From NCBI RefSeq assembly GCF_039654945.1, contig NW_027361788.1:44640001-44704000 (forward strand): DNA of 64,000 nt. Reading direction: 5' to 3'. Shown here one piece after another: positions 41,280-54,103 of the stretch. The position numbers and the translations under genes are program-made. Positions within the stretch are counted from its first letter, which is position 1, and every line of letters begins with the position of its first letter. The notes under the pieces were generated by a model. It did no database searches. It saw only the letters and a program-made list of their open reading frames with translations, and was not told where the DNA came from. Origin of the DNA: Dendrobates tinctorius. Its lineage: Eukaryota.

Positions 41280-44200
41280 TCAGTAGCGAGGATGAATCTA
41301 AAAAGACAAAGCAGACAATGCTGTGTGTAACTGGATAGTACTACTACATGTCTGATAGCAGCGGTGTACATCATGTGGCCATTGTCTGTAGCCCCCAGCC
41401 TTCTGGGCACTTACCTGTCTGTGGCTGGTGACTGCTCACATGCGTTTTCCATGTTGGAGAGGAATGGCACAGGCGCAGGGACGGGTAAGTACTAATGCGG
41501 CCATGGGAAGCCATCTATGGGACCTTCATGTATTGGCAGGATTTGGGTCTCCTGATCCCTACATGGGACTTCTTCGAAGGCTAGATGGGGCGGCGATGCA
41601 TAGGTTGTGGGGATATTGACATGTTTGGCTGTTTTGGCAACCTGCATAAATGACAATAGGGAGAGACCTAGGCATGGTCTCTTGGTCTTTGTTATTCCTT
41701 CTTTCCCTGTGATGTAATAGTTTATGATGGGGAGGGTGATGTATGGAGCAGGCTAAGGCGCTCAGACTTCTGCTCATGAAGTGAATAATTCTGAGACTAG
41801 TAAGTAAAAGTGGCACTTGGTGGAGAATTTTGAAAAAACACTTGTTATCAAAGATGTGAATTGATTTGCAAGCTGCCAAGTCTGTGTGGCCTTTTGATAG
41901 GAGCCCTTAGAGCGGCTTCCGACCTGCCAACATTCGCGGCTCTTTTTTAACTTAACCAACCCATCGTGATGCCACGTGCATCACGCAGCATTGATGCCAT
42001 ACTGCCAGGCCGTCTAATCGAGAGGAGCCGCAGATGCTGGCCTGTAGGAGGTCCGAAGGGATCCTGTCCACTAGCCACAGATCACCGACGTGACCTTCTG
42101 GTCCTGTGAATCGACTGACCCTAATTCCAGTAGTTATGTTCAGCTACTTGCATTGTTCTTTGTTTTATAGCAGAAAGTTGGTAATTCTACTGCTAAACTG
42201 AATTTTCAGTGGGGTGAATAATTTTGGTTGCACCTATACATTAATCTATAGATGAGCCTTGTAGATCGATAGCCATGTACAATGCACAGATCTAGACATG
42301 CAGTCAATATGGAAAGTATTCAGACCCCTTTAAATTTTTCACTCTGTTTCATTGCAGTCATTTGATAAATTCAAGAAAGTTCATTTTTTTTCTCATTAAT
42401 GTACACTCTGCACCCCATCATGACTATATAAAAAAAAAAAATTCAGAAATGTAAAAATTTTTGTAAATATATTAAAAAAAGAAACTGAAATCTCAAATGG
42501 TCATAAGTATTCAGACCTTTTGCTCAGTATTGAGTAGAAGCGCCCTTTTGAGCTAGTACAGCCATGAGTCGTCTTGGGAATAATGCAACAAGTTTTTCAC
42601 ACCTGGATTTGGGGATCCTCTGTCATTGTTCCGTCAGGTTGGATGATGAACGTTGGTAGACAGCCATTTACAGGTCTCTCCAGAGATGCTCAATTGGGTT
42701 TAGGTCAGGGCTCTGGCTGGGCCAGTCAAGAATGGTCACAGAGTTGTTCCGAAGCCACTGTTATTTTAGCTGTGTGCTTAGGGTCATTGTCTTGTTGGAA
42801 GGTGAACCTTCGGCCATGTCTGAGGTCCAGAGCACTCTGGAAGAGGTTTTCATCCAGGATATCTCTGTACTTGGCTGCATTCATGTTTCCTTCAATTGCA
42901 ACCAGTCGTCCTGTCCCTGCAGCTGAAAAACATAGCATGATGCTGCCACCACCATGTTAAACTGTTGGAATTGTATTGGGCAGGTGATGAGCAGTGCCTG
43001 GTTTTCTCCACACATACCGCTTAGGATTATCACCAAAAAGTTCTATCTTTGTCTCATCAGACCAGAGAATCTTATTTCTCATAGTCTGGGAGTCATTCAT
43101 GTGTTTTTTAGCAAACACTATGCAGGCTTTCATATGTCTAGCACTGAGGAGAGGCTTCTGTCAGGCCACTCAGCCATAAAGGCCCGACTGGTGGAGGGCT
43201 GGAGTGATAGTTGACTTTGTGGAACTTTCTCCCATCTCCCTACTGCATCTGTAGAGCGCAGCCACAGTGATCTTGGGGTTCTTCTTTACCTCTCTCACCA
43301 AGGCTCTTCTTCCACGATTGCTCAGTTTGGACGACCAGGTCTAGGAAGACTTCTGGCGGTCCCAAACGTCTTCCATTTAAGGATTATGGAGGCCACTGTG
43401 CTCTTAGGAACCTTGAGTACTGCAGAAATTCTTTTGTAACCTTGGCCAGATCTGTGCTTTGCCACAATTCTGTCTCTGAGCGCCTTGGCCAGTTCCTTTG
43501 ACCTCAAGATTCTCATTTGGTCTGACATGCACTGTGAGCTGTGAGGTCTTATATAGACAGGTGTGTGCCTTTCCAAATCAAGTCCTATCAGTTTAATTAA
43601 ACACAGCTGGACTCCAATGAAGGAGTAGAACCATCTCAAGGAGGATCATAAGGAAATGGACAGCATGTGACTTAAATATGAGTGTCTGACTGAGCAAAGG
43701 GTCTGCATACTTATGACCATGTGATATTTCAGTTTTTCCTTTTTTTTTTTAATAAATTTTCAAAAATCTCTACATTTGTTTTTTTTCAGTCAAGATGGGG
43801 TGCAGTGTGTACATTAATGAGAAAAAAAGGACTTTTTTGAATTTACCAAATGGCTGTAATGAAAGAGTGAAGAATGTAAAGCAGTCTGAATACTTTCCGT
43901 ACCCACTGTAAAGCTAAGCTCTATATCTGGAGCACATATCCTCGCCACGAGTGCAGTGAATATTCTTTAAAGATTTTTAGTCCCTTTTTATCTCCATTTT
44001 ATTACACCTATAGACAGGAGACCGCTAAAATGACAGAAGGAGACCTCCAGCCTTAGCGACGCATGTCGACAATAGGTTTTTAAATAGGTGTTAATGTTTT
44101 CTGTAGGTTGTCGGCACCAAAAAATCACAGCCAGTATCTGATCTCCTACGTAAAATGAATTTCCCTATTTCATGTTATGAGTACGTCACCTATAATTAAC

Positions 44201-53200: not shown

Positions 53201-54103
53201 GATGATAACTGTTGGATGGTGATATGAAGCAGGATAAGTACAGGCAGAATTGTTCCTGGTGAGGAGAAGGTGGATGATGAACACAAGTTTGATGGTTCCT
53301 GATAGAAACAAGATGATAGATGTTGGTTACGTGGTTCCTAGTAGAGGGAAGCGAAGCATTGATTGGAATAAATGGCTCCTGGCGATGATGACGATATTTC
53401 ATGGTGATGAACGGTAGGATTATGAGTGCAGCCTGTATTATTAATAGTGACAGGCAAGGTGATGAATAGCGGGATGATGAATGGCTAGATGTTCCTGGTG
53501 ATGGATACATGAATGGTTCCTGGTGGATCTAGGCAGGGTGATGACTAGAGATACACCCAGGTGGTTCCTCGTAGTCCAGCATAAACAGGTGAGCTCCCCA
53601 GGATCACCGAATACAGGGATCCTGGAATGGAGGGATCCTTGCTGATAGTAATAAAACTAAAGATACAGCCATCAGGGCATGCTTGGAGTTATAGTTGTAG
53701 AACGTAACATAACAAAAATAACGAGAGGGGAAAGCCATCTTGATTTCTGTCCTTTGTAACATAGAGGCAGATTGCTTACCACATGGCTACTTTGAGGACC
53801 ATTCAGAGAAGGGGCCCTGCTCTAGTTGGCCTCATCCCTCTTTTAGTAAGTGGTGGTGACTTTTACAGAATTGTGTAGGAAGCAAACAGTAGGTTGAGGA
53901 ATAGGCCCAAGGGTCCTGAACGGGGGGGGGGGGGGGGGATCAAAAACAGCCCCTCTATCCTGGGACAATAAAGTAGGATATGTGTTTGAGCTCTGCTATG
54001 GGGTCTTGTCTCTTCTCGCCGCTGCATCATATCAATGACTCCAATTAGCGGATCACCTAATGACCGGATCTAGTGCGTCCCACAGTGTGGCCCTTAAACA
54101 CAT
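41280..54103 (-). CDS. TAFA1-like (FAM19A) secreted chemokine-like protein, about 158 aa; exons 54103-54057, 52792-52647, 51052-50912, 50225-50101, 41297-41280
   Basis: Core [46 protein letters not shown]|[42 protein letters not shown]|IHPRY* has all 10 TAFA cysteines and exons of 141, 125 and 18 nt. The upstream exons join in phase and give a signal-peptide-like [32 protein letters not shown]. Minus-strand AATAAA at 41144-49. The core is high confidence; the start codon is less certain. Confidence 0.88.
42301..43908 (-). mobile_element. Degenerate Tc1 (IR/DR type) transposon
   Basis: ~230-bp TIRs with ggaaagtattcagac; fragments FQQDNDPKH and LPRPGRP. Confidence 0.9.
44346..49958 (+). mobile_element. 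DIRS1-like tyrosine-recombinase retrotransposon, full-length but degenerate
   Basis: Inverted terminal repeats (44346-44452 vs 49822-49910) and an internal complementary region 49658-49741. RT ([32 protein letters not shown]), RNase H (SDNVTTV), methylase-like domain (YAFPP) and YR (RAHSTR, TFTKHY). Many stops and frameshifts. Confidence 0.93.
47642..48072. mobile_element. Palindromic Harbinger-type MITE inside the DIRS RNase H region
   Basis: TIRs ctttcagacttgc / gcaagtctgaaag; TAA TSD. Confidence 0.8.
53035..53300. repeat. Degenerate ~72-bp tandem repeat
   Basis: gattgttcctggtgaggagaaggtggatgatga recurs 3-4 times. Confidence 0.7.

What the first reader, a model, noticed from the sequence alone, without database searches (positions are those of the whole stretch)
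41280..54103. Compact, divergent TAFA1-like gene: candidate ohnolog lost in mammals
Seen: the 10-Cys TAFA core with TAFA1-type features ([20 protein letters not shown], IHPRx end). It has several substitutions in a normally very conserved protein ([20 protein letters not shown]), a unique ~30-aa Pro/Tyr-rich pro-segment, and a coding span of only ~13 kb. Known: mammals have TAFA1-5, none on X. TAFA1 is a very large gene on 3p14, and Xp11 is paralogous to 3p (FOXP3/FOXP1, TFE3/MITF, PRICKLE3/PRICKLE2). Inference: an additional TAFA family member retained from whole-genome duplication, i.e. an uncharacterised neurokine.
Basis: partly seen in the sequence, partly recalled or inferred. Interest (0 to 1): 0.74.

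Follow-up and report, generated by a model that had tools for sequence, protein, structure and literature searches.

The report
Second TAFA1-type gene beside TIMM17B
This frog window holds an intact, spliced and strongly conserved extra copy of the brain signalling gene TAFA1; the copy sits beside TIMM17B from ray-finned fishes to echidna, is absent from the known human set, and has been studied by nobody.

Summary
The gene is real. It lies on the minus strand and has five coding exons with GT-AG introns. It encodes 150 aa with an intact 10-cysteine TAFA domain.

The 5' end (54103) is wrong: the start codon is at 56559, so the coding span is 15.3 kb.

It is not the TAFA1 orthologue. Frogs (three poison-frog species among them), a salamander and caecilians also carry a canonical, almost invariant TAFA1 on another chromosome. 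That gene spans 337 kb in Xenopus.

The window's gene belongs to a separate lineage, here called TAFA1L. I found it in frogs, salamanders, caecilians, squamates, echidna, bowfin, gar and reedfish. In five species whose flanks were read it lies tail-to-tail with TIMM17B.

The core is under strong purifying selection (dN 0, dS 1.08 against Leptodactylus). One public contig joins exon 1 to exon 2 exactly at the predicted splice sites.

"Lost in mammals" should read "not found in therians", because echidna keeps it. Origin by whole-genome duplication is plausible from the location, but my tree does not resolve it.

RefSeq already predicts the protein as "TAFA-1" or "uncharacterized". No paper I could search names the lineage.

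The parts
56537..56855 (-). Exon 1 of TAFA1L. It is mostly 5'UTR plus the first 23 coding bases (ATG at 56559-56557), with the donor GT at 56536-56535. The upstream limit is a minimum. An in-frame upstream ATG at 56724 would give a 205-aa ORF.
   Evidence: A 347-nt contig of run X1 covers 56537-56750, runs on past 56750, and is joined to 52792. The region resembles the first exon at the Spea locus.
52647..52792 (-). Exon 2: the rest of the signal peptide (..[20 protein letters not shown]) and the 30-aa Pro/Tyr-rich segment that ends ..NQLPVI.
   Evidence: AG acceptor and GTAAGT donor. It matches the frog proteins P0004, P0005 and P0156.
50912..51052 (-). Exon 3: first half of the TAFA domain ([46 protein letters not shown]).
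50101..50225 (-). Exon 4: second half of the TAFA domain ([30 protein letters not shown]).
41144..41297 (-). Exon 5: IHPRY plus TGA (coding part 41280-41297) and a short 3'UTR reaching an AATAAA at 41144-41149.
   Evidence: The polyA site itself is inferred.
42527..49640 (.). Transposon load of intron 4: a Tc1/mariner fragment (42527-43639) and a retroelement with a reverse-transcriptase ORF (about 45226-49640).
   Evidence: HTH_SB and RVT_1 hits. This explains why the gene spans 15 kb here and 4.6 kb in Spea.
54399..55641 (.). A 36-bp minisatellite (about 34 copies) inside intron 1. A second array with a 72-bp unit lies at 53025-53280.
36302..38551 (+). TIMM17B, the conserved convergent neighbour. 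Its 3' end lies about 2.7 kb from the 3' end of TAFA1L.
   Evidence: exon matches to the Tim17 genes of the Spea, echidna and bowfin loci.
28840..35893 (-). PQBP1 (WW-domain gene), head-to-head with TIMM17B.
   Evidence: The same gene follows TIMM17B in bowfin and Leptodactylus.

Best explanation
The window carries a functional gene for a secreted TAFA-family protein. It belongs to an old sister lineage of TAFA1, here called TAFA1L, and is not TAFA1 itself.

Shown. The gene has five coding exons and a 150-aa product. The product has a hydrophobic N-terminal leader, a 30-aa Pro/Tyr-rich linker that models as disordered, and a complete 10-cysteine TAFA domain. The lineage coexists with canonical TAFA1 in amphibians, reedfish and gar. 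Its position next to TIMM17B is kept in frogs, a lizard, echidna and bowfin. Its core is under strong purifying selection, and at least its first intron is spliced in a public run.

Inferred. Because it keeps every cysteine of TAFA1-4, including the CC pair that TAFA5 lacks, it most likely acts as TAFA1-4 do in mouse. There they are made in neurons and become disulfide-linked to the cysteine-loop of neurexins in the secretory pathway, which changes neurexin glycosylation.

The duplication that produced it predates the split of ray-finned and lobe-finned vertebrates. It most likely (about 0.65) dates to the early vertebrate genome duplications. The gene was not found in therians, birds, turtles, crocodilians or teleosts.
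For: Gene model: all four introns are GT-AG and the reading frame is a clean 453 nt. The cysteine pattern is intact. Pfam TAFA matches end to end (1-90 of 90) in P0156, whose core is identical to the window's.

The 205-aa ORF from the upstream ATG is 100% identical to the RefSeq prediction XP_073397414.1 of Dendrobates tinctorius.

Two genes per species: canonical TAFA1 and TAFA1L sit on contigs of different length in at least 15 amphibian species. Reedfish has P0051 and P0108, and gar has P0239 and P0067.

Synteny:
- Spea: kinase, TAFA1L, Tim17, a 193-aa gene that matches the window's PQBP1 exons, ESSS.
- Echidna: kinase, TAFA1L, Tim17.
- Zootoca: kinase, TAFA1L, Tim17.
- Bowfin: PRA1, TAFA1L, Tim17, WW, GPKOW.
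- Leptodactylus: TAFA1L, Tim17, WW.
- The window has the same order.

Tree: TAFA1 plus TAFA1L separate from TAFA2-4 with support 98.8/100. TAFA1L is monophyletic at 95.6/80.

Selection: dN/dS is 0 against Leptodactylus (dS 1.08), 0.028 against Spea, 0.094 against echidna and 0.085 against bowfin.

Splicing: a contig of depth 532 joins 56537 to 52792, with CT..AC on the plus strand, which is GT..AG on the gene's strand.

Mechanism by analogy: Khalaj et al. 2020, PMC7480106.
Against: No tissue or expression level is known. The runs are coded and are only guessed to be RNA, and only one junction was seen, in one contig of one run.

The signal peptide is judged by eye and by homology, not by a predictor. 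Neurexin binding is pure analogy.

Frogs carry 13 lineage-specific changes in the 87-aa core, several of them changing charge, so the partner may differ.

The AlphaFold model was poor (pLDDT 61).

The tree does not place shark or lamprey TAFA1 relative to the duplication. No shark TAFA1L was seen. The absences in other groups rest on hit lists cut at 120 rows.
Confidence: 0.85

Rival explanations
1. TAFA1L is old but arose by a small-scale duplication or transposition of TAFA1 in the stem of bony vertebrates, not by whole-genome duplication.
For: In some searches only canonical-type TAFA1 was seen in sharks and skates. On the 87-aa core, shark TAFA1 is equally distant from canonical TAFA1 and from TAFA1L, 6 differences each. 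The tree leaves a three-way split.
Against: Exon boundaries are shared with TAFA1, so it is not a retrocopy. From my own knowledge of gene maps, not tested here, the gene lies among TIMM17B, PQBP1, GPKOW and PRAF2. That block in human is Xp11.23 and holds TFE3, FOXP3 and PRICKLE3, while TAFA1 lies near their paralogues MITF, FOXP1 and PRICKLE2 at 3p14. A chance landing in the paralogous block is unlikely.
Confidence: 0.22
2. It is simply the frog's 1:1 TAFA1 orthologue, fast-evolving and moved to a new place.
For: RefSeq names it 'chemokine-like protein TAFA-1' in many species.
Against: Canonical TAFA1, with the MVSAMSW leader and a core identical to that of mammals, is present as a second gene in frogs, three dendrobatids among them. 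The Xenopus canonical gene spans 337 kb.
Confidence: 0.01
3. It is a frog-specific or amphibian-specific duplicate.
For: The frog copies are the most divergent, with 13 private substitutions.
Against: Orthologues with the same signature and the same TIMM17B neighbour occur in a lizard, echidna and bowfin. Orthologues with the signature also occur in gar and reedfish.
Confidence: 0.01
4. It is a decaying or unexpressed pseudogene, or an artefact of annotation.
For: No run is on record as RNA.
Against: The frame and splice sites are intact. There are no amino-acid changes against Leptodactylus despite saturated silent sites. A spliced exon 1-exon 2 contig exists.
Confidence: 0.02

Closest known systems
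TAFA1 / FAM19A1 (canonical)
   Same: Both have the TAFA domain with the same 10-cysteine spacing. Both carry the GGTC start, [20 protein letters not shown] and the IHPRx tail encoded on a tiny last exon. Exon boundaries match. The two group together against TAFA2-4 with support 98.8/100.
   Different: TAFA1L sits on a different chromosome with different neighbours (TIMM17B and PQBP1). It spans 0.7-19 kb in most species (61 kb in reedfish), against 66 kb for canonical TAFA1 in fugu and 337 kb in Xenopus. It has a different leader and pro-segment. Its signature is CCN[RH]N[RH], SIV[T/M]GKWW and ..KTTK. It evolves much faster: the window's core differs from caecilian TAFA1L at 15 of 87 residues, while frog and caecilian canonical TAFA1 differ at 1 of 87.
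FAM19A5l / TAFA5-like of zebrafish (bioRxiv 10.1101/2020.08.11.245738)
   Same: It is a precedent: a TAFA paralogue attributed to the 1R/2R duplications that exists in fish but not in mammals.
   Different: It belongs to the TAFA5 branch, which lacks the CC pair. It is a different paralogue group and sits in a different genomic block.
TAFA2, TAFA3, TAFA4
   Same: They have the same domain and cysteine pattern. TAFA3 and TAFA4 share the ..KTTK ending, and TAFA3 shares NRNR. These are therefore probably ancestral states kept in TAFA1L.
   Different: They have CF[PS]GQVAGTT and ..QKWWC motifs and form a separate clade.

Membership tests
TAFA / FAM19A family (Pfam PF12020) | Match to the TAFA domain profile above the curated cut-off. 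| tested here: met
   P0156, whose core is identical to the window's, scores 147 bits against a cut-off of 25 and covers profile positions 1-90 of 90. The window's exon 3 found 615 proteins, and all 120 that were listed carry PF12020.
TAFA / FAM19A family (Pfam PF12020) | Cysteine spacing CX7CCX13CXCX14CX11CX4CX5CX10C, as given in PMC7480106. | tested here: met
   A regular-expression match on the spliced product.
TAFA / FAM19A family (Pfam PF12020) | N-terminal signal peptide, meaning a secreted protein. | tested here: inconclusive
   There is a hydrophobic stretch after MGCRLQRS, modelled as a helix at residues 9-28, and a small-residue site at ..SYA|K. No signal-peptide predictor was available.
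TAFA1-type branch (as opposed to TAFA2-5) | Groups with TAFA1 in a tree and carries [10 protein letters not shown] and TLPDNSGW. | tested here: met
   (support 98.8/100).
Canonical TAFA1 orthology group | The only TAFA1-type gene of the genome, with the MVSAMSW-type leader, the NKNR, SIVIGKWW and GNKIKTTR motifs, and a very large gene. | tested here: not met
   A second, canonical gene exists in related frogs. The motifs differ. The coding span is 15 kb against 337 kb.
Ohnologue pair from the early vertebrate genome duplications | Both copies are present in ray-finned and in lobe-finned vertebrates. | tested here: met
   Reedfish and gar have both copies, and amphibians have both.
Ohnologue pair from the early vertebrate genome duplications | The tree dates the duplication before the split of cartilaginous and bony vertebrates. 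| tested here: inconclusive
   The positions of shark and lamprey TAFA1 are unresolved on 87 residues.
Ohnologue pair from the early vertebrate genome duplications | The two genes lie in blocks that share many other duplicate pairs. | not testable with these tools
   The neighbours (Tim17, WW/PQBP1, GPKOW, PRA1, ESSS) were found here. Their human positions and the 3p14/Xp11 pairing come from my own knowledge. Look-ups reach only 10 kb of flank.
Neurexin ligands of the TAFA1-4 type | Keeps the CC pair that TAFA5 lacks and forms a disulfide-linked complex with the neurexin cysteine-loop. | not testable with these tools
   The CC pair is present. Binding needs an experiment (PMC7480106).

The most novel reading that the evidence does not exclude
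TAFA1L is a sixth ancestral TAFA neurokine of jawed vertebrates and a true genome-duplication twin of TAFA1. It has taken on a partner or tissue of its own, which would fit the bursts of change in the frog and squamate stems followed by complete stasis. Its disappearance in therians came with the rearrangement that separated the CDK-family kinase gene from TIMM17B.
Probability: 0.3. Interest if true: 0.6.

Novelty: new member of a known kind. Interest (0 to 1): 0.5.

Why it matters
The TAFA/FAM19A proteins are treated as a five-member family because mammals were studied first. This locus shows a further member that most land vertebrates outside therians still keep under strict constraint.

Automated pipelines label it "TAFA-1". 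That label hides it and can corrupt orthology tables and comparisons of expression between species.

It offers a natural comparison for what fixes TAFA1's extreme conservation. The twin is free to change in bursts while keeping every cysteine.

It also gives work on neurexin regulation a new candidate ligand that can be tested in amphibians and lizards.

Tried and rejected
- Start codon. I considered the in-frame upstream ATG at 56724, which gives the 205-aa ORF used by RefSeq. I set it aside because it would bury the signal peptide. Only the MG[CW]RL start or its position is shared across frog families, and ranid models read that stretch in another frame.
- Earlier notes of the scan. They hold nothing on TAFA.
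- Structure. The AlphaFold2 model on 52 sequences was too poor (pLDDT 61, pTM 0.33) to justify fold searches, so I ran none. No TAFA relative has a solved structure.
- Kinase neighbour. I first guessed PIM2. Its closest solved relatives are CDK7 and other CDKs, and from memory it resembles CDK20. The Atlas search gave only "protein kinase".
- Context look-ups that failed. Isoform proteins P0173, P0004 and P0150 and lamprey P0270 are not on record. Reedfish TAFA1L and fugu canonical TAFA1 have no neighbour within 10 kb.
- Literature. Three searches for a cited statement of the FOXP/MITF-TFE paralogy found nothing in the held library.
- Reads. Most laid contigs were short repeat pieces or intron-like pieces at 95-97% identity. 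Exon 3 was not covered and only the first 28 nt of exon 2 were, which the tool warns can be a filtering effect.
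Full report
**What is in the window**

The TAFA-like reading frames lie on the minus strand. Proteins of other frogs guided the exon limits. The gene has five coding exons:
- 56537-56559 (ATG at 56559)
- 52647-52792
- 50912-51052
- 50101-50225
- 41280-41297

All four introns begin with GT and end with AG. The joined frame is 453 nt and encodes 150 aa. The product has three parts:
- a hydrophobic leader;
- a 30-aa Pro/Tyr-rich stretch that ends ..NQLPVIS;
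- a TAFA domain whose ten cysteines have exactly the published spacing (pattern from PMC7480106).

An AATAAA lies 131 nt after the stop.

The upper limit, 54103, is not: that ATG runs into a stop after 16 codons. Intron 4 (about 8.8 kb) is filled by a Tc1/mariner fragment and a retroelement. Intron 1 holds a 36-bp minisatellite. This accounts for a 15.3-kb coding span here against 4.6 kb in Spea.

**Is it transcribed and constrained?**

One run search and one read-laying were allowed. In run X1, a 347-nt contig with word depth 532 covers 56537-56750, continues upstream, and is joined to 52792. It skips 3,744 bases whose ends are CT..AC on the plus strand, which is GT..AG for this gene. That is my predicted exon 1-exon 2 junction to the base.

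The run is only guessed to be RNA, and one contig carries the junction. Exon 3 was not covered, and exon 2 only for 28 nt. The tool warns that such holes prove nothing.

Independent of reads, the 86 whole codons of the core show dN 0 and dS 1.08 against Leptodactylus. dN/dS is 0.028 against Spea, 0.094 against echidna and 0.085 against bowfin. This is a working gene.

**Is it TAFA1?**

No. The word search with exon 3 gave six frog proteins at 96-98% identity, followed by a wall of canonical TAFA1 at 82-87%.

A signature scan showed that the frog proteins share three features only with a salamander protein and a reedfish protein: CCNRNR, SIV[T/M]GKWW and ..KTTK. Reedfish also has a canonical TAFA1.

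A search with the N-terminus of coelacanth TAFA1 then brought up canonical TAFA1 from these amphibians:
- frogs: Xenopus, Pelobates, Rhinophrynus, Pelodytes, Leptodactylus, Rhinoderma and Anomaloglossus;
- salamander: Lissotriton;
- caecilians: Rhinatrema and Microcaecilia.

These proteins have the MVSAMSW-type leader and a core identical to that of mammals.

Many species hold both genes on contigs of different length, and so presumably on different chromosomes. They include Spea, Hyla, Lithobates, Mixophyes, Engystomops, Phyllobates and two Ranitomeya species.

The window's long ORF is 100% identical to a RefSeq prediction from Dendrobates tinctorius. The dendrobatids with both genes are therefore its nearest sampled relatives. 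The canonical gene spans 337 kb in Xenopus and 66 kb even in fugu.

**How old and how widespread is the second lineage?**

A search with the salamander protein and the all-against-all representative search found the same signature in several groups:
- caecilians;
- salamanders (Ambystoma, Pleurodeles);
- about twenty frog genera;
- many squamates;
- the echidna Tachyglossus;
- bowfin, spotted gar and reedfish.

None of the 33 signature-bearing proteins comes from a teleost, bird, turtle, crocodilian, shark, coelacanth or therian, or from Xenopus. The hit lists were cut at 120-150 rows, so these absences are leads and not findings.

In a maximum-likelihood tree of the gap-free 87-aa core, TAFA1 plus TAFA1L separate from TAFA2-4 at 98.8/100. 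TAFA1L is monophyletic at 95.6/80. Shark and lamprey TAFA1 are not placed relative to the duplication.

**Synteny**

| Species | Gene order |
|---|---|
| Spea | kinase, TAFA1L, Tim17, PQBP1-like gene (193 aa), ESSS (NDUFB11) |
| Echidna | kinase, TAFA1L (only 740 bp long), Tim17 |
| Zootoca | kinase, TAFA1L, Tim17 |
| Bowfin | PRA1-family gene, TAFA1L, Tim17, WW, GPKOW |
| Leptodactylus | TAFA1L, Tim17, WW |

The window has the same order: NDUFB11 (minus strand, 3224-18266), an intronless LZTFL1-like ORF, PQBP1 (minus, 28840-35893), TIMM17B (plus, 36302-38551), then TAFA1L (minus).

The convergent TAFA1L-TIMM17B pair is therefore at least as old as bony vertebrates. From my own knowledge of the human map, TIMM17B, PQBP1, GPKOW and PRAF2 lie in Xp11.23 close to TFE3, FOXP3 and PRICKLE3. 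TAFA1 lies in 3p14 close to MITF, FOXP1, PRICKLE2 and ARL6IP5, which is a PRA1-family gene. That pattern is what a genome-duplication pair would show. I could not test it here and found no paper in the held library to cite for it.

**Mode of evolution**

Canonical TAFA1 is nearly frozen: 0 of 87 differences between frog and bat, and 1 of 87 between frog and caecilian. TAFA1L changes in bursts. Thirteen substitutions are private to frogs, several of them changing charge (E to R, two K to Q, G to E). Yet the window, Leptodactylus and Lithobates do not differ at all. Squamates have their own set of changes.

**How it most likely works**

- Shown: the domain, the cysteines, the leader-like N-terminus, the constraint and one spliced junction.
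- Inferred: secretion, and a role like that of TAFA1-4. In mouse neurons these become disulfide-bonded to the cysteine-loop of neurexins during secretion and reduce neurexin O-glycosylation and heparan-sulfate addition. TAFA5 lacks the CC pair and does not bind (PMC7480106). TAFA1L keeps that pair.
- Unknown: the tissue, and whether the frog-specific surface changes alter the partner.

**What is known already**

RefSeq and UniProt hold predictions of this protein under "chemokine-like protein TAFA-1", "FAM19A1-like" or "uncharacterized protein". I found no paper that names or studies the lineage.

The broad chemokine-evolution study treats TAFA1 as one clade. [quoted passage not shown] A zebrafish preprint sets the precedent of FAM19A5l as a duplication-derived paralogue missing from mammals.

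**Verdict**

It is a new, unnamed member of a known family and of moderate interest.

Noticed in passing
window 18559-19458 (+): A single-exon 299-aa ORF matches Pfam Leu_zip (PF15294) end to end at E 3e-104. It is an LZTFL1-like gene without introns, lying between the first exon of NDUFB11 and PQBP1. At Spea, bowfin and Leptodactylus the gene listed beside TIMM17B on this side is the PQBP1 counterpart; whether an LZTFL1-like ORF lies further on there was not checked.
   Followed up: partly
L001 4940-7817 (Spea); L003 1-133 (echidna); L006 1-140 (Zootoca): In tetrapods the upstream neighbour of TAFA1L is a 339-345-aa CDK-family kinase gene. Its closest solved relatives are CDK7 and other CDKs, and from memory it resembles CDK20, which in human is not on the X. 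If that holds, a therian rearrangement breakpoint falls exactly where TAFA1L is missing. No kinase exon was seen in the 7 kb of window upstream of TAFA1L.
   Followed up: partly
window 54399-55641 and 53025-53280: A 36-bp minisatellite of about 34 copies at 90% match, and a 72-bp array of 3.5 copies, both inside intron 1 of TAFA1L. They create long spurious ORFs on both strands.
   Followed up: no
window 6799-7830 (-): An apparently intact 343-aa Tc1/mariner transposase ORF inside an NDUFB11 intron. Degraded copies lie at 29.5-30.5, 39.2-40.0, 42.5-43.6 and 58.4-59.3 kb.
   Followed up: no
proteins P0270 and P0346 (Lampetra planeri): Lamprey TAFA1-type and TAFA2-type proteins are recorded on contigs of the same length (11,410,622 bases), probably the same contig. 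This fits an ancestral linkage like that of human TAFA1 and TAFA4. The look-up for context failed.
   Followed up: no
Every Xenopus tropicalis protein retrieved was canonical TAFA1. No Xenopus or Rhinophrynus TAFA1L appeared, although about twenty other frog genera have one. This may be a loss in pipoid frogs, but it is unverified because the hit lists were truncated.
   Followed up: no
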